A stretch of 64,000 nt of DNA from Caecitellus pseudoparvulus (taxonomy: Eukaryota > Protista > Bigyra: Bicosoecida), in NCBI GenBank assembly GCA_965644315.1, contig CBFFRQ010000043.1, positions 496,001 through 560,000 of the forward strand, written 5' to 3'. Of the stretch, positions 20,275 to 26,297 are shown one piece after another. The position numbers and the translations under genes are program-made. How positions within the stretch are numbered: the stretch's first letter is position 1; every line of letters begins with the position of its first letter. The notes below the pieces were generated by a model. That model worked only from the letters and a program-made list of their open reading frames with translations, searched no databases and was not told the origin of the DNA.

Positions 20275-22040
20275 ATGGCAGCTCAGGAAGGGGACCGGAT
20301 ATTTTGGAGGTCTAGAATTGTGGACTGCACCGAAGACAGCGCAGCCACCGTAGGAAAGGCTGCGTTTGAGTACGAGTGTGCATCCGTGCGTGAAACGCTG
20401 GCGGTGGGCTGCGCAGCAGAGGGCAACAGTCCGTTCTGTGCACGTGCCACAGGAGAACGAACTTCGGGACACCATCACCCTCATTCACTTCCTGCTGCTG
20501 ATCACACTGAGTATCCTGATGGTGAGTTGCGAGGCTGCTGCTTCCCTTCCTGCAGCTGGTTGCTGCACAGGCAACCTGCGCCGCGCAGGGGTGTCTCTAC
20601 GGAGCGGCGAACCGCATTTCCAATGCTAGGCTGCAACGCCAAGAAGTCCGCATTCAGCGCCAGCCGCAGCTTGTGCCTGCTCCTCCGAAGAAGGTCCGTG
20701 AACTACGCATGGCGGCGCTCGGCTCGCTGTCCAGCACGCCCAGCCCTTCCCTGCGCAGGGCGCTGTCGCAGACTCCATCCGCCGGGCCAACGACAACGCC
20801 TGCGCGATCCCGCACATGTACGGCGCGGCACATCGTCTGGGGGTGCTGCCACCCCTCCCTGCGCCGCCGCCCCTCCTCGCCCCAGCCGTCACCTTCACGG
20901 ATGGGGTGGTGGCTGCCTTGCGAGATTTATGTGCGTGCCCCGGCCTGCCTCACCAGGGCCAGAGCACGCCACGCACCTGTGACGCGCCTCCACCCCCTCC
21001 CAGGCCAAGTCATCGCGAGGACATATCCTGGCTCGTCGGACGCGGAGCGTGTCCTGAGCATGCTCAGTTCCCGGCACCCTCTGCGGGATGTGGGGCAGCT
21101 CGTCGCCACCACCCTGCGCAAGCACTTGGTACAGCGGGGCGCATCTCTCTCAGCCCTTCTAAGCCGCCAGAGCAGTGCCCAGCCGCCTTCGGGTTCAGGG
21201 CGCCCGCCCTCCTTCTCCTCGGGGGGGCTGCCGCACGCCGCCGCCCCCCCTCCCCCCATCCGGCCACCAGCTCCCCCAGCCCGCCACCGTGGCAGCGACG
21301 ACGGCGCAGCAGCGGCACAGCGTGAGCCTCCCTCTGGCACAGGTATGGACAGCAAGGCCAGTGCGGGGCAGGAGCTGCCGTACGTGCGGCTGCACCGGCC
21401 AACTAGCTCGCAGGCTGCCCAGCGGCGCAGCAACATCGTGGGGGACTCAAAGCGCCCCCTTTCGGACTCTGGCAGCTCGACAGAGGAGGACTTCACAAGG
21501 GAGAGCAGCTCTGACAGCCAGGCACTCCCTGTCCTCCCGCGTGTCTTTTCACACCCTGGTGCGGAGCAGGCGCAGCCAGCGTACTCACACGTGCACCGGC
21601 CAGGCAGCAGTGGCGACGATGTGGGCATGCGCACTCTGTCCACTCTGCCGGAGCGCGTGCAAGAAGCTGTGGACCAAGTGACTCTGCTGTTCAACAAGCC
21701 GACCCTGGTGCCGGCGGGTTCGCTGTCCCGCCTGCCCCTGGGCGCCGACCACGAGCACTGCCTGGCGCTGGTGCGTCTGCTGGTCAGCCTGCGGCGTGAA
21801 GTTGTCCTGAGCGCCGCGAGGGTGGATGCGCTGGCACGCCAGGCGGCTGCGGCGGCTCAGGCTGCGTCGGTGGCCGAGATGCACTTCGGCGTGGGGGCCC
21901 CCGCTGCAGGGGGTCGGTCAGCCGAGGGTCACGCTCATGGGCAGCGCCCCAGTCACAGCGGGGAGGGGCAAGCGAGTCAGCCCCATGAGGGGGGGGGTGG
22001 CCAGCATATCCGGCACCGCAGTCGAGCAAGCCACGAGTGA
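20275..22040 (+). CDS. Hypothetical single-pass membrane protein; multi-exon, model uncertain
   Basis: Exon ENELRDTITLIHFLLLITLSILM splices in phase to GCLYGAANRISNARLQRQEV..., which continues into ORF 20673-22040. No family recognised. Confidence 0.45.
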
Positions 22041-22138
22041 TCTCCCCTCAAACGAGAATATACATGTATTAACCAGCGAGCAGGGCCAGGCACTGATTCT
22101 GGCGCGTGGTGCCAAGGAATTTGTATGCGACACGCAAC

Positions 22139-24451
22139 ATGGCAGCTGCGGCCGACCCAGCTGCAGGCGCGGGCTGTGACCTCGGCGGGCTACGAGTTCC
22201 AGGACCAACGACACCAGTTCAGCCTGTCCGGGCCGCGCTCGTGTGCAAAGTCCCGGCCCAGGACCCGTCAACTGCGGCCTATTTCCGCCGACGAGTATGT
22301 GTCCCGGAACCCCTCCCCGCACCTATTCTGTCTGCTGAACGATGATCTTGTCTCCAAGTGCAGGTGTTTAACCAAGAGAACAACATTGACGGCATCGAGA
22401 TCGATGTGCCTACGGCCACTGTGCCAGGTTTGCGCGAGCACTGGCCCGAGCTGCGTAGGCAGCTGCATGCGCAAAAAGTAGCCCTTCCTTCTGGAGCAGT
22501 CGTGGCGGACGCCGAGGCGTTGGCAGCCATCATGGCGTGTCCATACACGCCTGGTGCAGAGTGGGTGATGCAGGTCCAGTCCTTCAAGGGTCGCCTGTTC
22601 CTCTCCTTGCAAGACGGTTCGGCCGAGGACGGCCCCTGCCAGGCGCTGACTCCGGCTCTGGAGCACGCGCTAGCTGGCCAAAGCCCCAGCACTTGCGCTT
22701 CCTCACCAGCTATGGGTGAAGTATGTGTAACTAGCCGGACCCTGCAGGTGGGCGGTGCCCACGAGGTGTTGTGGGTCCTTGACCGCGTGCCGTTCACGAG
22801 GCCGGGCCAGGCCGCTGGGCTGCCTTCCTACATGCAAGTGTGCCCCGCCCTCGCAACGCAAGGCACCGCGAGCGATGCGCTGAGCAAAGGCGAGGCCATT
22901 CGTTTGTACTGTCGGCACTTCCTTGGGGGGGCTGGCAGCGTGGCTGTGGTGCGGTGTGCCACTGGCGGCGGGCGATGCAAGGTCTCGGGGGTGTTCGTGG
23001 AGTCCCCCGAAAGGGTCGCCACACAGGGGGCTTGGTCTCGCACAGCATGCTTGAGTTGGCTGTGTTCCACACTCCAGTGGCTGCGCGGCATCACGGCGGC
23101 GCATGCCGACGCACACGGCGGCTGCACCTTGCTGCTGCGCTGGCATGGCGCCCGTGGCCTGGATGCCACGTTCTCGGCAGGCAGCGCACCGGGCAGTGGC
23201 GGGGACCCTGCAGCCTTTTGCCCGCCTCTTGTGCCCCCCCTGGACATTGCCTCTCTCCTCAGCAAGCGCACACTGTCTGCACCGCTGCCCTTCTCCCTGG
23301 CTAGTGCTGCAGTGCGGGGGGGACACCAAGCCTCCACTGCGTCAGCTGCGGCAGGCAGTGGCGCAGGGAGGCGTCGTATGCCCAAATCCCTCATGTACGA
23401 TAGGTGGGACGAGCCTGAGTTTGCTGGGGCGGGCGTGCAGGGGCAGCGCCTGGCCATCCTCGTTCCCTTCCGGGACCAGCCCGCGCAGAACCGTGGTGCC
23501 CAGCTGGCTGAGTTTGTCCGGCACATGCCAGAGTTCATCGAGAAGCACGTGCGGCCGAGGCCAGCCCAGTGGCGCATCTTCATCATCGAGCAATCCCAAG
23601 ATGGCCATAAGTTTAACCGTGGCAAGCTGCTGAACGTCGGCGCGTACTTGGCAGCCGCAGGCGGGTCCCTTTCCGAGTACATCGGGAAGGAGGTGGATGT
23701 CGCAACCGGATCGTCGCCGGCGCTGCAGACGTCCAATGCCGCCGGCGCCTTCAACGCCTTGTGCCTGCATGACGTGGACCTGCTGCCAGATGCACGCCTG
23801 GGCCCGTGGTACGCGTGCTGGCACAAGTCCATGCCGGTGCACATCGCCGATGTGTGGGACAGGTACGCCAGCCTGGGCAACGTGTATGTGGGCGGCGTCC
23901 TGAACATGCCGCTGGAGTCCTTCCAGGCCTGCAACGGCTTTCCCAACGTGTTTTGGGGCTGGGGCGGGGAGGATGACGCCCTTTCCACACGCATGCGAGC
24001 CAAAGGAGTGGAGGTGATCAAACTCCCTGACACCCTGGCTGGCTCCCTCACTGACTTGGAGGACCGCATGATCGCGGCGAGTGGTGGTGAGCGCGCCGGC
24101 ACCAAGCTGTCCGAGAACGGGCGCCCAGAGTGGGTGAACATGACCAAGAAGGAGCTGCTCATGCTGGAGCGCCCCTCTGTGCGCGGGCAGGAGCAGAAGT
24201 GGTCCACCTGGGATGGCATGGCTTCGTTGAACTTCAAGGTTCAAGCTGTGGCGGACATGGCGCCGGGCGTGACCCGCATCACAGTGGACTTGCTGGCGGA
24301 CAAGGACCCCTTCGCAGCGAAAGAGGTCAGGGAGGCCTTAAAACAGTACACAGGCGCGGCGGCGCAGAAGATGCAGCACATCAAAGGCCTGCGGCAGGAG
24401 GAGGCCGCCCCTCCCCAAGCCAAGCGACCTCGAAAAGACACTGGGCCGTGA
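22139..24451 (+). CDS. Fusion protein: degenerate DXO/Rai1-like domain plus GT7 (beta-1,4-galactosyltransferase-like) domain
   Basis: Exon 22139-22294, intron 22295-22363, then one open frame. GT7 motifs: LAILVPFRD, IIEQ, FNRGKLLNVG, LHDVDLLP, YVGGV, NGFPNVFWGWGGEDD. N-terminal half has AIMACPYTPGAEWVMQVQSFKGRLFLS, resembling Rai1/DXO. Confidence 0.8.
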
Positions 24452-24879
24452 AGGTTTCTACTCTACGCCCTCCTCGGGGGTCACACGTTTCCGCGGAGCC
24501 GGGGACGCGAGCCGCCTGCCCACGGCATGCACGCATAGGTGCAATTGGGATCAAGTCCTGCATTGAAAACTGTCTTGAAGGGCCCCCTTGGAGGCTGAGT
24601 ACGGAACCTTGTGCGCACTCACCCGGCAGCCTCATGCGTGTCTGCTGCTGGGCGAGGAATGCCTTCAATGCACCGCCCACCCCTTGAGCTCCATGGACTG
24701 AGCACTATCTTGTAGGAGGTGTTGTGCCAGCTGCACTGCAGTGCTGTGCGCTGTGACTTGGCAGTCACTGCGGCAATTCAAATCCTACACACGCCTGGTG
24801 CACTCACATTTTTGCTTCGAACGAACGGAAGCAGGACAGCCCCGTATCCCCCCCCCCTGCGCGCAACAGCGCGTGCACC

Positions 24880-26297
24880 ATGGCGGCATGCGAAGCTCCA
24901 AGTGGTGCAGTGTCGCTGGCCAGCAGCTCCACGAGCGTCGCGGCAGAGCAGCTTCGCACCGCAGCGAGCTCCCTCCCAGCCATCTCCAGTGTCCCCGTGC
25001 AGTCGTCTCGCCAAGATGTCCGCGAGTTGCGAGATACCCTATGGAACTTTGTGCATGAAGATTGCATCCCAGCAGAGAAAGAATGGGCGGCATTCATGGC
25101 GGGCTTGCCGCCTTCTCGGCGATTTGCAGTGTCTGAAGTGCCGGTGGTAACGCGGCTGAAACGCCGTGCCAAACAGCTCGGCCTCTGGAACCTGTGGATG
25201 ACTGAAGAGTACCCCATGAGCACAGCGAAGCTGACTCTGTCTGAGTATGCTCCGCTGTGTGAAATCATGGGCCGGAGCTTTCTCGCTCCAGAGGTGAGTT
25301 GGCATCGCCTTCAGCTGCGAGCAGCCGGCTTCAAGCACAGTGCTGCCCTCGCGCACAGGCATGCAACTGCAGTGCTCCCGACACGGGGAACATGGAGGTG
25401 CTGGCAAAGTACGGGACGGAGCAACAGCAGCGACAGTGGCTGGAGCCGCTCCTTGCCGGGGACATCCGCTCTGCCTTCTTGATGACTGAGCCCGACGTGG
25501 CGTCCAGTGATGCAACCAACATCGGCACGACCATTGAGCGCCGAGGTGACTCGTACGTCATCAACGGCCGCAAGTGGTGGTCCACTGGCGCCGTGTCCCC
25601 TCGGTGCAAAGTGGCCATCGTCATGGGCAAGACAGACCCCAGTGCTTCTGCCCACAAGCAGCAGAGCATGGTGCTTGTGCCGATGGACACCGCTGGCGTC
25701 AAGGTGGAGCGCGCGCTCACCGTCTTCGGCTACGATGACGCACCAGAAGGCCACGCTGAAGTGTCCCTCACAGATGTCGTGGTGCCTGCGTCCAACATCC
25801 TGCTGGGGGAGGGGCGCGGATTCGAGATCGCGCAGGGGCGCCTGGGCCCCGGCCGCATTCACCACTGCATGCGTGCCATCGGGTCTGCGGAGCGGGTGCT
25901 GGATGCAATGCTGGGGCGGGTCACCACGCGCAAGGCGTTTGGGAAGCCACTGGCCAGGCAGGGCACCATCCAAGCTGACATCGCCGCCAGCCGCATCGAT
26001 ATCGAGGCTGCCAGGCTGTTGGTGCTGGCTTGCGCAGCCCAAGTGGATGCCGTAGGTGGCAAGGCAGCCCGGAAGTGGGTGGCCATGATCAAGGTCTTCG
26101 TCCCGTCAGCTGTGCAGCGCGTGGCAGACCGGGCCATCCAGGCATTTGGCGCTGCTGGCGTGAGCCAGGACACCCTGCTGGCGCGAGTGTTTGCCGGAAT
26201 GAGGTCTCTTCGCATCGCAGATGGCCCTGACGAAGTGCACGCGCGGACTGTGGCGCTGCTTGAGCTGCGGGAGTACCTCACAGCCGCCAAGCTGTAG
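24880..26297 (+). CDS. Acyl-CoA dehydrogenase, ACAD10/11-type, probably peroxisomal
   Basis: [69 protein letters not shown]. One intron at about 25294-25358. C-terminal AKL is a PTS1. Confidence 0.93.

What the first reader, a model, noticed from the sequence alone, without database searches (positions are those of the whole stretch)
22139..24451. Pseudo-DXO/Rai1 domain fused to an intact GT7 glycosyltransferase with an NLS: possible nuclear or RNA-linked glycosylation
Seen: one reading frame joins two halves. The N-terminal half has VADAEALAAIMACPYTPGAEWVMQVQSFKGRLFLSL, then SRTLQVGGAHEVLWVLDR, YMQV and LYCRHFLGGAGSVAV. The C-terminal half is a GT7 domain with intact DVD and WGWGGEDD. There is no signal peptide or TM anchor, and the tail has PQAKRPRK. 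Known: DXO/Rai1 enzymes process abnormal RNA 5' ends and caps, with the ordered motifs TPY...W...F.G.LYL, GEVDC, YVELKT and W.QSFL.G; GT7 enzymes are normally Golgi type II membrane proteins. Inference: the acidic catalytic residues look lost, leaving a possible RNA 5'-end or Xrn2-binding module that steers a soluble sugar transferase to RNA caps or RNA-processing proteins.
Basis: partly seen in the sequence, partly recalled or inferred. Interest (0 to 1): 0.8.

Follow-up and report, generated by a model that had tools for sequence, protein, structure and literature searches.

The report
Dead DXO fold fused to glycosyltransferase
A marine protist gene joins a catalytically dead copy of the RNA-cap-checking enzyme DXO/Rai1 to an intact, membrane-free sugar transferase; the transferase's relatives elsewhere are fused to mRNA-capping enzymes, which points to an undescribed sugar modification at the 5' end of messenger RNAs or on the machinery that makes them.

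Summary
One gene (exon 1 22139-22294, a 69-nt GTATGT..CAG intron that holds the in-frame TGA, exon 2 22364-24451) encodes about 747 aa.

- **C-terminal half:** a bona fide GT7 domain. Pfam 7N and 7C score above threshold, and DVD and WGWGGEDD are intact.
- **N-terminal half:** a weak, sub-threshold Pfam RAI1 match, backed by a language-model match to RAI1 clusters. An AlphaFold model (pLDDT 74) matches only DXO, Rai1, Dxo1 and eIF3d in the whole PDB (Z 12-16.5; the next fold scores 5.5).
- **Catalytic residues:** the PD-(D/E)XK residues align to V/D(S) and Q-x-C, so the nuclease is very probably dead.
- **Localisation signals:** there is no signal peptide or TM segment, and the tail carries a KRPRK motif.
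- **Orthologues:** three metagenomic orthologues keep the fusion. The one whose DNA I could read also keeps the intron position.
- **Relatives of the GT7 domain:** the clade is soluble and recurrently fused to cap guanine-N7 methyltransferase, PCIF1, WW, Plus-3 (weak) and DEAD-box domains. In a giant virus it is fused to the whole capping enzyme.

My reading is that a non-catalytic 5'-end or cap-machinery module targets a nuclear sugar transferase. The acceptor is unknown: cap ribose, or an O-linked sugar on Pol II-associated proteins. I found no description of this in the paper library.

The parts
22139..22294 (+). Exon 1 (52 codons, ATG to ..YFRRR); probably the first strands of the DXO-like domain
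   Evidence: The ATG at 22139 is preceded by an in-frame stop ending at 22096. The exon ends in RRR directly before GTATGT. The orthologue's exon 1 (L009:830-934) also ends ..GRRR before GTACGC. Pfam finds nothing in exon 1 alone. The model's residues 3-300 align to mouse DXO 74-384, which leaves DXO's first ~70 residues to be supplied by exon 1 (inference).
22295..22363 (+). Predicted 69-nt intron (GTATGT...CAG) holding the in-frame TGA at 22343-22345
   Evidence: Sequence. A 55-nt intron lies at the same position in the orthologue L009:935-989 and changes frame there. The neighbouring acyl-CoA dehydrogenase gene has a short GTGAGT..CAG intron near 25294. It is not covered by any read contig, so it is not shown at the RNA level.
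22364..24451 (+). Exon 2 (695 codons plus stop): rest of the DXO-like domain, linker, GT7 domain, basic tail
   Evidence: Uninterrupted ORF. The tblastn match of the orthologue starts exactly at its predicted exon-2 start, 990. Ten of 11 CDS differences in environmental contigs are synonymous.
22364..23299 (+). Catalytically degenerate DXO/Rai1-fold domain (exon-2 residues 1-312)
   Evidence: Pfam RAI1 scores 23.9 bits at E 2.9e-5, below the cut-off of 26.8; residues 41-84 match profile positions 72-115. Orthologue P0003 hits a later, collinear part of the same profile (265-296, E 0.0046). In the ESM Atlas feature search, 23 of 30 nearest clusters are RAI1, with score 0.94. AF2 model plus PDB and Atlas fold searches.
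22733..22843 (+). Former PD-(D/E)XK active-site strands: ..WVLDR.. (motif III position) and YMQVC (motif IV position)
   Evidence: Motif alignment to DXO's GEVDC and YVELKT gives E234->V138, D236->D140 (S in P0002 and P0003), E253->Q158 and K255->C160. W137, V138, L139, R141, Y156, Q158, V159 and C160 are identical between the window protein and P0002, and P0003 has the same residues. E234 and D236 coordinate the two Mg ions in mammalian DXO (PMC9014873). The mapping is by sequence and secondary structure, not by superposition.
23300..23449 (+). Low-complexity linker with a basic patch (GRRRMPK, 23366-23386)
   Evidence: Low pLDDT and no secondary structure after about residue 305. More distant relatives carry KRPR/KRAR/KRSR here in 20 of the 21 sequences checked.
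23450..24355 (+). GT7 (beta4-Gal-T-like) GT-A catalytic domain, soluble
   Evidence: Pfam Glyco_transf_7N and 7C are above cut-off. PDB matches: B4GalT7 at E 4e-17 and B4GalT1 at E 3e-16. Motifs: DVD 23771-23779, WGWGGEDD 23954-23977, and Tyr in NVYVGG (23879-23896) at the B4GalT1 Tyr289 position. TDLEDR (24050-24067) lies where my by-eye alignment places the B4GalT1 metal-ligand His (alignment; from memory of B4GalT1). Thirty-three columns are invariant across 41 clade members.
24419..24439 (+). C-terminal basic motif AKRPRKD (NLS-like)
   Evidence: The orthologues end in ..VRPRRD..AKRRLE and ..VRPRTQ and carry AKR(Q/E)RE slightly upstream. Function as an NLS is inferred, not tested.

Best explanation
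The gene encodes a soluble, probably nuclear, two-domain protein.

**N-terminal domain.** It is a DXO/Rai1-fold module that has lost the metal-binding PD-(D/E)XK residues. It no longer cuts RNA. It serves as a targeting module that binds the 5' end or cap of nascent transcripts, or a component of the capping and early-elongation machinery. eIF3d is the precedent: the same fold used as a non-nucleolytic cap binder.

**C-terminal domain.** It is an active inverting GT7 transferase. It moves a hexose from a UDP-sugar (probably UDP-Gal, given the conserved Tyr at the B4GalT1 Tyr289 position) onto a sugar hydroxyl presented at that site.

**Acceptor.** It is undetermined. My absolute odds are:
- about 0.25-0.3 for a ribose of the cap or first nucleotides;
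- about 0.25 for an O-linked monosaccharide (O-GlcNAc or O-Fuc) on Pol II CTD, Spt5 or capping proteins;
- the remainder for something else.

**Shown here:** the gene structure (comparatively), the DXO fold, the intact GT7 motifs, the absence of a membrane anchor, conservation of the fusion, and the cap-enzyme fusions of the GT7 clade.

**Inferred:** catalytic death of the DXO module, nuclear location, cap or 5'-end binding, and the donor and acceptor.
For: **Fold.** The AF2 model has pLDDT 73.7. The exhaustive PDB search returns only DXO, Rai1, Dxo1 and eIF3d at Z 12-16.5, then falls to 5.5. The Atlas shape search returns RAI1 (TM 0.65), eIF3d, EDRF1_N and NARG2_C.

**Independent sequence signals for RAI1.**
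- Pfam E 2.9e-5.
- A second, collinear segment in orthologue P0003.
- ESM feature search: 23 of 30 nearest clusters are RAI1.

**Active site.** Motif positions are replaced by V/D(S) and Q-x-C and are identical in the three full-length group-A sequences.

**GT7.** The domain is intact.

**No anchor.** No TM or signal peptide. Basic NLS-like motifs recur in different positions across the family.

**One gene.** The fusion is kept in P0002, P0003 and P0004 at 38% (N-terminal domain) and 56% (GT7) identity. Differences in the CDS are nearly all synonymous.

**Domain associations of the same soluble GT7 clade** (SH-aLRT 100 apart from metazoan B4GalT):
- cap N7 methyltransferase + GT7, in five proteins (E 1e-35 to 1e-44);
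- WW + PCIF1 + N7 methyltransferase + GT7 (P0056), on a contig with kinesin genes;
- WW + GT7 in diatom transcriptomes;
- GT7 + DEAD-box helicase in Phytophthora and Peronospora;
- weak Plus-3 + GT7;
- guanylyltransferase + N7 methyltransferase + GT7 on a giant-virus-like contig, next to an FtsJ methyltransferase gene.

**Precedent.** Arabidopsis DXO1 has a non-catalytic role in cap methylation (PMC9839713).
Against: - No biochemical, localisation or RNA-level evidence exists. The runs that hold the locus are labelled metatranscriptomic but are probably DNA, and none bridges the intron or the domain junction.
- The confident AF2 model needed an alignment that includes more distant N-terminal domains (groups B and C). 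Their homology to the window's domain is only moderately supported: hhalign E 7e-4, probability 26%. A group-B domain gave no RAI1 signal in the Atlas. With the four close sequences alone, pLDDT was 36.6.
- The Pfam RAI1 score is below the curated cut-off. Profile searches of PDB sequences found nothing.
- E100 is identical in the three full-length group-A sequences and may correspond to DXO's motif II Glu. The former pocket is conserved, so some ligand chemistry may remain.
- All known GT7 acceptors are pyranose sugars on glycans. No GT7 is known to act on RNA.
- Fusion partners such as GT90 and sulfotransferase in the same clade are not RNA-related.
- The Arabidopsis DXO1-RNMT1 contact runs through a plant-specific extension, not the DXO fold.
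- The predicted complex with the genome's own cap methyltransferase gave no verdict.
Confidence: 0.55

Rival explanations
1. **Protein-glycan extension only.** The GT7 domain elongates an existing O-linked monosaccharide (O-GlcNAc or O-Fuc placed by GT41 enzymes) on the Pol II CTD, Spt5 or other nuclear proteins. RNA is never an acceptor, and the dead DXO fold is simply a docking domain for that machinery. This is a sub-case of the best explanation, listed separately because it predicts different assays.
For: Every characterised GT7 acceptor is a terminal GlcNAc, Glc or Xyl, and B4GalT1 galactosylates O-GlcNAc in vitro (established knowledge). WW and weak Plus-3 partners read phospho-CTD/CTR. 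The genome has at least two full-length GT41 (OGT/SPY-like) genes. The genome's own cap methyltransferase carries a WW domain, so CTD docking is used in this lineage.
Against: In five lineages the GT7 domain follows catalytic domains that act on the cap itself (N7 methyltransferase, PCIF1). In a giant virus it follows the whole capping enzyme, and such viral polymerases are not known to carry a CTD (my knowledge). The DXO fold is an RNA-5'-end or cap-binding fold in all characterised members.
Confidence: 0.25
2. **Xrn2/Rat1 adaptor.** The dead DXO domain keeps only the Rai1-type partnership with the nuclear 5'-3' exonuclease. It brings the transferase to termination or RNA-surveillance complexes rather than to caps.
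For: Rai1 structures in complex with Rat1 are among the best fold matches (9exs, 8yf5, 3fqd). The genome has XRN-family genes, including a 977-aa Xrn2-sized ORF. No canonical RAI1 gene was detected, so this protein could be the only DXO-family partner available.
Against: The Rat1-Rai1 contact is not conserved outside fungi, and mammalian DXO does not bind Xrn2 (established knowledge). None of the other fusion partners of the GT7 clade is a termination factor. No interaction was tested here.
Confidence: 0.08
3. **Function unrelated to RNA.** The protein is a cytosolic or nuclear transferase for some other acceptor, such as a storage or wall precursor or a metabolite. The DXO-fold domain is a structural or regulatory remnant, and the cap-enzyme fusions in relatives are lineage-specific accidents.
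For: The same GT7 clade also includes GT90 and sulfotransferase fusions, and many members have no recognisable partner. Group B, C and D N-terminal domains give no RAI1 sequence signal. The window lies in a region rich in glycosyltransferase genes.
Against: At least six different RNA-5'-end or Pol II-linked partners recur on the tree (N7 methyltransferase, PCIF1, guanylyltransferase, WW, DEAD, DXO fold, plus weak Plus-3). NLS-like motifs are retained in different positions across groups.
Confidence: 0.12
4. **The N-terminal domain is still an enzyme.** It would use a remodelled pocket (E100, D140, Q158, C160, H185, D249, H251), for instance as a hydrolase for an unusual cap such as UDP-sugar, NAD or FAD, working in tandem with the GT7 domain.
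For: The former active-site strands and neighbouring residues are identical in the three full-length group-A sequences despite 38% overall identity. DXO enzymes remove many non-canonical caps (PMC7293010, listed).
Against: The PD-(D/E)XK Lys and two of the metal-binding acids are replaced. D140 is Ser in the orthologues. More distant relatives (groups B and C) have no acidic residues at these positions.
Confidence: 0.05
5. **Artefact.** Two adjacent genes, or an intron read-through, are merged by a long GC-rich open frame.
For: GC is 64%, so long chance ORFs occur. No read evidence spans the junction.
Against: The same two-domain arrangement occurs in three independent metagenomic orthologues, with a conserved inter-domain segment (PP.VP.LD.A.L.S.R.L.APLP.SL). 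Synonymous-only variation is seen in both halves. The DXO fold runs to residue ~305, only ~55 residues before the GT7 core.
Confidence: 0.02

Closest known systems
DXO / Rai1 / Dxo1 decapping exoribonucleases (mouse DXO 4J7L/3FQI, Arabidopsis DXO1 6DKN, fungal Rai1)
   Same: Same fold over ~250-260 residues (Z 15-16.5). Motifs are collinear: the ..PY..W..F.G.L.L block, the hairpin carrying motif III, Y.x.x at motif IV, and the ..FL.G.. block. Weak Pfam RAI1 matches hit two collinear segments.
   Different: The Arg, Glu/Asp and Glu-x-Lys catalytic positions are replaced. The score is below the Pfam cut-off. The domain is fused to a glycosyltransferase. Sequence identity to solved structures is only 10-15%.
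eIF3d cap-binding domain (5K4B)
   Same: A DXO fold used without nuclease activity to bind the mRNA cap. It gives the second-best group of fold matches (Z 12-14; Atlas TM 0.58).
   Different: eIF3d is a translation-factor subunit. There is no detectable sequence similarity, and cap-binding residues were not compared. eIF3d is not fused to an enzyme.
Beta-1,4-galactosyltransferases B4GalT7 and B4GalT1 (CAZy GT7)
   Same: Both Pfam GT7 domains, the DVD metal motif, the WGWGGEDD acceptor/base loop and the Tyr at the donor-selectivity position are present.
   Different: No signal anchor or stem. The metal-ligand His of the B4GalT1 flexible loop appears replaced by a clade-invariant D-L-E motif, by my eye alignment. 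It lies on a long, fully supported branch apart from the metazoan enzymes and has an NLS-like tail.
Uncharacterised cap-enzyme-GT7 fusion proteins of protists and a giant virus (P0033, P0037, P0056, P0059, P0061, P0124)
   Same: Same soluble GT7 clade, with the GT7 domain at the C-terminus behind an RNA-5'-end module.
   Different: Their partner domains are active-looking cap-forming enzymes (N7 methyltransferase, PCIF1, guanylyltransferase), not a dead cap-surveillance fold. They sit in the sister subclade.
Arabidopsis DXO1 as non-catalytic activator of cap methyltransferase RNMT1 (PMC9839713)
   Same: A DXO-family protein whose main role is non-enzymatic and tied to cap formation in the nucleus.
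   Different: [quoted passage not shown]
Other non-catalytic DXO-fold modules: EDRF1 N-domain, NARG2/ICE2 C-domain
   Same: Retrieved by shape (TM 0.53-0.62) and by language-model features. They show that the fold is repeatedly reused as a scaffold.
   Different: Different partners, and none is fused to a glycosyltransferase.
Nucleocytoplasmic glycosyltransferases OGT/SPY (GT41)
   Same: Soluble glycosyltransferases that act in the nucleus. The animal OGT modifies the Pol II CTD. Paralogues exist in this genome.
   Different: Unrelated GT-B fold. They are targeted by TPR repeats and transfer directly to Ser/Thr.

Membership tests
RAI1/DXO (Pfam PF08652) | DXO/Rai1 three-dimensional fold | tested here: met
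   AF2 model pLDDT 73.7. Z 16.5 to 6DKN and 16.2-16.4 to mouse DXO. The top 10 of 48,161 chains are all of this fold family, and the next scores Z 5.5.
RAI1/DXO (Pfam PF08652) | Score at or above Pfam's gathering threshold (26.8 bits) | tested here: not met
   21.8 bits for the whole ORF and 23.9 bits for the N-terminal half, at E 2.9e-5. Orthologues score 16.7 and 11 bits.
RAI1/DXO (Pfam PF08652) | Catalytic motifs: Arg (motif I), G-h-x-h-E (II), E-h-D (III), E-h-K (IV) | tested here: not met
   By motif alignment, R132 aligns to A50, E234/D236 to V138/D140 (Ser in the orthologues), and E253/K255 to Q158/C160. Only E100 may correspond to the motif II Glu. The mapping is by sequence and secondary structure, not by superposition, so the result is strong but not final.
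RAI1/DXO (Pfam PF08652) | Decapping, pyrophosphohydrolase or 5'-3' exonuclease activity | not testable with these tools
   Needs a purified-protein assay.
GT7 (Glyco_transf_7N/7C; beta4-Gal-T family) | Both Pfam domains above their gathering thresholds | tested here: met
   7N scores 38.5 bits (cut-off 27) and 7C scores 56.2 bits (cut-off 23). PDB B4GalT7 and B4GalT1 match at E 4e-17 to 1e-15.
GT7 (Glyco_transf_7N/7C; beta4-Gal-T family) | DxD metal motif and WGWGGEDD loop with the catalytic Asp | tested here: met
   DVD at residues 470-472 and WGWGGEDD at 531-538. These are invariant or nearly invariant across 41 clade members. The orthologues have E in place of the first D of the final DD pair.
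GT7 (Glyco_transf_7N/7C; beta4-Gal-T family) | Type II membrane topology (N-terminal signal anchor and stem, Golgi lumen) | tested here: not met
   No hydrophobic segment: the maximum KD19 is 1.55, inside the DXO fold. The N-terminus is a 300-residue globular domain.
GT7 (Glyco_transf_7N/7C; beta4-Gal-T family) | Transfer of Gal or GalNAc from a UDP-sugar to a terminal GlcNAc, Glc or Xyl | not testable with these tools
   Only the conserved Tyr at the B4GalT1 Tyr289 position hints at UDP-Gal or UDP-Glc rather than UDP-GalNAc (inference).
eIF3d-type cap-binding DXO fold | DXO fold without nuclease residues | tested here: met
   Z 12-14 to eIF3d structures. Loss of catalytic residues as described above.
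eIF3d-type cap-binding DXO fold | Binding of the m7G cap | not testable with these tools
   Needs cap-analogue binding or cross-linking.

The most novel reading that the evidence does not exclude
The soluble GT7 clade to which this protein belongs adds a hexose to the mRNA 5' cap structure, on a ribose hydroxyl of m7G or of the first transcribed nucleotides. That would be a previously unknown, glycosylated cap in stramenopiles, other protists and some giant viruses. In this protein a dead DXO fold acts as the cap reader that presents the substrate. A variant: the GT7 domain uses UDP-sugar-capped RNA as its donor and thereby processes a non-canonical cap.
Probability: 0.22. Interest if true: 0.95.

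Novelty: new variant of a known kind. Interest (0 to 1): 0.8.

Why it matters
- **New use of GT7.** GT7 enzymes are textbook Golgi enzymes, and DXO/Rai1 proteins are textbook cap-quality-control nucleases. A conserved protein that joins a dead DXO fold to a live, anchor-less GT7 domain would move a classical secretory-pathway fold into the nucleus.
- **An unrecognised biochemical step.** The GT7 clade is repeatedly fused to cap guanylyltransferase, cap N7 methyltransferase, PCIF1 and WW modules. This argues for an unrecognised step at the 5' end of Pol II, and viral, transcripts. If the acceptor is the cap itself, it would be a new class of mRNA cap modification. If it is an O-glycan on the CTD or Spt5, it would be a new layer of the CTD code in protists.
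- **Directly testable.** Recombinant domains can be assayed, cap mass spectrometry can be run on culturable diatoms and oomycetes that carry the sister forms, and knock-outs can be made there.
- **Another pseudo-enzyme use of the DXO fold.** It adds to eIF3d, EDRF1 and ICE2.
- **Possible loss of canonical DXO.** This protist may lack a canonical DXO/Rai1 altogether.

Tried and rejected
**Sequence searches of the N-terminal half that found nothing**
- phmmer against PDB sequences found only noise (carboxysome shell proteins, E 0.2).
- Profiles of 4 and 19 sequences, and a 48-residue motif block, found nothing.
- The word-based search found only the protein itself.
- Exhaustive phmmer against 1.84 billion representatives found only itself and one orthologue cluster.
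- Consequence: sequence alone could not establish the fold.

**Structure prediction**
- AF2 with the four close sequences failed (pLDDT 36.6) and was not used.

**Link between groups A and B**
- The Atlas feature search of a group-B N-terminal domain gave no RAI1 signal. The A-B link therefore rests on hhalign (E 7e-4), the shared architecture, the GT7 tree, and the fact that the mixed alignment yields a confident DXO-fold model.
- hhalign of A against C and A against D found nothing.
- The alignment-based word search added few members.

**Reads**
- Four seawater runs gave short contigs over 22671-23252, 23379-23892 and 24326-24598.
- No joint was seen, and nothing covered the intron or the domain junction.
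- The runs are flagged as probably DNA, so they show neither transcription nor splicing.

**Predicted complex**
- N-terminal domain plus GT7 domain with the genome's own cap N7 methyltransferase domain: no verdict (0.23 against a mark of 0.34).
- My alignments were not used by the tool. This counts neither for nor against binding.

**RAI1 in the genome**
- The RAI1 HMM found no candidate in the whole genome, even at E <= 10.
- The same pipeline finds the eukaryote-specific families PF03291, PF12237 and PF03159 there.
- The tool's control genomes cannot ring for RAI1, so absence of a canonical DXO is suggested, not shown.

**Literature**
- Searches for GT7/WW, DXO/glycosyltransferase, PCIF1/glycosyltransferase, cap/galactosyltransferase fusions and nucleocytoplasmic GT7 found nothing relevant.

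Exon 1 was searched alone (no Pfam hit), and all folds and searches used exon 2 by reference.

**Other**


Full report
**1. What is in the sequence**

The window is GC-rich (60-70%) and comes from a 30.6-Mb eukaryotic assembly.

An open frame of 697 codons runs from 22358 to 24451 on the + strand.

The interval 22295-22363 begins GTATGT, ends CAG and is 69 nt long. Removing it joins a 52-codon first exon, which ends ..YFRRR, in frame to exon 2 at 22364.

The metagenomic orthologue on L009 has the same arrangement. Its 35-codon ATG exon ends ..GRRR, a 55-nt GTACGC..CAG interval follows, and the coding sequence continues in a different frame. The tblastn match to that contig starts exactly at the predicted exon-2 start. 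The neighbouring acyl-CoA dehydrogenase gene has a similarly short GTGAGT..CAG intron.

I therefore take the gene as exon 1 22139-22294, intron 22295-22363 and exon 2 22364-24451. Following the operators' rule, I never joined the exons: exon 1 was searched alone and gave nothing, and everything else used exon 2 by reference.

**2. The C-terminal half is a real GT7 domain**

- Pfam Glyco_transf_7N (38.5 bits) and 7C (56.2 bits) both pass their cut-offs.
- The best solved relatives are B4GalT7 (E 4e-17) and B4GalT1.
- DVD, WGWGGEDD and the Tyr at the position of B4GalT1 Tyr289 are present and conserved in a 41-member alignment.
- Where my by-eye alignment places a metal-ligand His in B4GalT1's flexible loop, this clade has an invariant D-L-E. 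This is an inference from my knowledge of B4GalT1.
- There is no hydrophobic segment anywhere.

**3. The N-terminal half has the DXO/Rai1 fold**

Sequence evidence is weak but consistent:
- Pfam RAI1 is the top family at E 2.9e-5, but at 23.9 bits it is below the cut-off of 26.8. Residues 41-84 match profile positions 72-115.
- Orthologue P0003 hits a later part of the same profile, positions 265-296, in collinear order.
- The ESM Atlas feature search puts RAI1 clusters at 23 of the 30 nearest, with score 0.94 and 198 of 256 shared features.
- Sequence searches of the PDB found nothing.

Structure prediction needed a deeper alignment. AlphaFold2 with four sequences failed (pLDDT 36.6). With a 19-sequence alignment that adds the N-terminal domains of more distant relatives, it gave pLDDT 73.7 and pTM 0.76.

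Fold searches with that model agree:
- Foldseek's best PDB matches are mouse DXO (E 1e-10), Rai1 proteins and Arabidopsis DXO1, then the eIF3d cap-binding domain.
- VIA-align gives Z 16.5 for AtDXO1 (249-250 residues at 4.1-4.2 A) and 16.2-16.4 for mouse DXO, with model residues 3-300 against chain residues 74-384.
- In an exhaustive comparison with 48,161 chains, the ten best are all DXO, Rai1, Dxo1 or eIF3d. The eleventh scores Z 5.5.
- The Atlas shape search returns RAI1 (TM 0.65), EDRF1_N, eIF3d and NARG2_C. These are all DXO-fold modules, several of them non-catalytic.

**4. The nuclease site looks dead**

I anchored the alignment on the ..PY..W..F.G.L.L block and on the predicted strands. 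The positions then map as follows.

| DXO position | Window residue | Note |
|---|---|---|
| Motif I Arg (R132) | A50 | |
| E234 / D236 | V138 / D140 | D140 is Ser in the orthologues |
| E253 / K255 | Q158 / C160 | Y.QVC is identical in the three full-length group-A sequences |

E234 and D236 hold the two Mg ions in mammalian DXO (PMC9014873).

E100, identical in the three full-length group-A sequences, may be the motif II Glu. The former pocket is well conserved. I therefore read the site as a binding pocket rather than a catalytic one, and I list residual chemistry as a rival. The mapping is by sequence, not by superposition.

**5. It is one conserved protein**

- phmmer of the N-terminal half against 1.84 billion representatives finds only the protein itself and one other cluster.
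- P0002, P0003 and P0004 all carry the same two domains and a conserved inter-domain segment.
- Identity between the window protein and P0002 is 38% in the DXO-like domain and 56% in GT7.
- Environmental contigs at 95-99% identity cover parts of both halves. Ten of their 11 differences inside the CDS are synonymous, and eight further differences crowd the ~100 nt after the stop.
- Those runs are probably DNA and do not span the intron or the junction, so transcription as one RNA is not shown.

**6. The wider family**

Searching with the GT7 half found about 125 relatives. On a tree they form one clade on a long, fully supported branch (SH-aLRT 100) apart from the metazoan B4GalTs.

One subclade (support 90) contains:
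- the window's group (A);
- groups B and C, which have N-terminal domains of the same layout (W..L helix, a VQY.SGV hairpin, a KRT.G..R.L.L hairpin, a C.WL[KR] helix), followed by a KRPR-type motif and then GT7;
- two forms with a weak Plus-3 match (21-26 bits, below the cut-off of 27).

hhalign links group A to B at E 7e-4 over 192 collinear columns, and B to C at 96% probability.

The sister subclade (support 94) holds:
- WW + GT7, including complete diatom and MMETSP transcripts;
- cap guanine-N7 methyltransferase + GT7, in five proteins (E 1e-35 to 1e-44 over the full domain);
- WW + PCIF1 + N7 methyltransferase + GT7 (P0056, PCIF1 E 3e-58), on a contig with kinesin genes, so from a cellular eukaryote;
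- GT7 + DEAD-box helicase in Phytophthora and Peronospora.

A more divergent member (P0124) is guanylyltransferase + N7 methyltransferase + GT7. Its contig carries Erv1, NUDIX, SNF2 helicase and RNA polymerase subunit 2 genes, and an FtsJ methyltransferase gene next door, so it looks like a giant virus. This member sits on a long branch, and its placement on the tree is unsure.

GT90 and sulfotransferase fusions also occur. Searches of the paper library found no description of any of this.

**7. Genome context**

- The genome's own cap N7 methyltransferase carries an N-terminal WW domain.
- There are three PCIF1-like genes, several GT41 (OGT/SPY-like) genes and three XRN genes.
- The same pipeline finds no RAI1 candidate at all. 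This suggests, but does not prove, that no canonical DXO/Rai1 exists here.
- The six other GT7C loci of the genome are of a different, chondroitin-synthase-like kind.

**8. Mechanism**

The most economical reading has three parts:
- The dead DXO fold is a targeting module for the RNA 5' end, the cap or the capping machinery. eIF3d is the precedent for cap binding by this fold. Arabidopsis DXO1 is the precedent for a non-catalytic DXO role in cap methylation (PMC9839713), although there the contact runs through a plant-specific extension.
- The NLS-like motifs send the protein to the nucleus.
- The GT7 domain transfers a hexose to a sugar hydroxyl at that site.

Two acceptors fit. The cap or first-nucleotide ribose is favoured by the in-line fusions to cap-acting catalytic domains and by the viral case. 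An O-linked sugar on CTD, Spt5 or capping proteins is favoured by known GT7 chemistry, by the WW and Plus-3 partners and by the GT41 genes. I put 0.55 on the targeted-transferase model as a whole and about 0.22 on cap glycosylation specifically. A predicted complex with the cap methyltransferase gave no verdict.

**9. Verdict**

- The protein is not a functional member of the DXO enzyme family, because the catalytic motifs are not met and the Pfam threshold is not reached. It clearly has the DXO fold and descends from that family.
- It is a GT7 member by domain and motifs, but not by topology.
- The architecture and the cap-enzyme association of its GT7 clade appear undescribed.

Noticed in passing
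L032:1505-1701 (G000:C43:578145-578345, minus strand; about 18 kb beyond the window's end): A decayed 65-codon copy of the GT7 tail of this gene (residues 548-612). It is 66% identical at the protein level and 86% over 154 nt, and it is interrupted by stop codons. It looks like a pseudogene fragment from a partial duplication.
   Followed up: partly
L030:1180-3165 (G000:C48): The genome's cap guanine-N7 methyltransferase (PF03291, E 9e-70) carries an N-terminal WW domain and a ~200-residue C-terminal extension with no Pfam match. WW-mediated docking of cap enzymes therefore seems to be used in this lineage.
   Followed up: partly
L026:10001-15598 (JGI Ga0611983_000195): On a giant-virus-like contig (Erv1, NUDIX, SNF2 helicase, Rpb2), the mRNA capping enzyme (guanylyltransferase + N7 methyltransferase) is fused to a GT7 domain. 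It is followed directly by an FtsJ-type methyltransferase gene.
   Followed up: partly
L028:4557-7916 (ENA ERZ1764458 contig, between kinesin genes): A single 1119-aa protein of a cellular eukaryote strings together WW, PCIF1, cap N7 methyltransferase and GT7. It resembles a cap-modification assembly line with a sugar transferase at the end.
   Followed up: partly
whole genome G000: The RAI1 HMM finds no candidate even at E <= 10, whereas XRN (3 loci), the cap methyltransferase and PCIF1-like genes (3 loci) are found by the same search. Two of the PCIF1-like loci have equal 756-aa ORFs on C3 and C101, possibly haplotigs. A canonical DXO/Rai1 may be missing.
   Followed up: partly
window 20673-22040 (+): A 455-codon low-complexity ORF (Pro/Ser/Ala-rich) with no Pfam match ends 98 nt before the ATG of the gene studied. 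Environmental contigs cover parts of it. It is probably a separate gene in a very compact intergenic setting.
   Followed up: no
window 24880-26297 (+): An acyl-CoA dehydrogenase gene is split over two frames by a short GTGAGT..CAG intron starting near 25294. I used it only as a local example of intron form.
   Followed up: partly
L003, L005 (G000:C18, C13) and four further loci: Six other GT7C-containing ORFs (588-812 aa) have a long, conserved, non-DXO N-terminal region and a GWGGED motif. They are a different, chondroitin-synthase-like kind of GT7 relative.
   Followed up: no
P0018, P0123: Two relatives have a weak Plus-3 (Rtf1-type) match at the N-terminus (21-26 bits, below the cut-off) before the GT7 domain, and long unannotated C-terminal extensions.
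   Followed up: no
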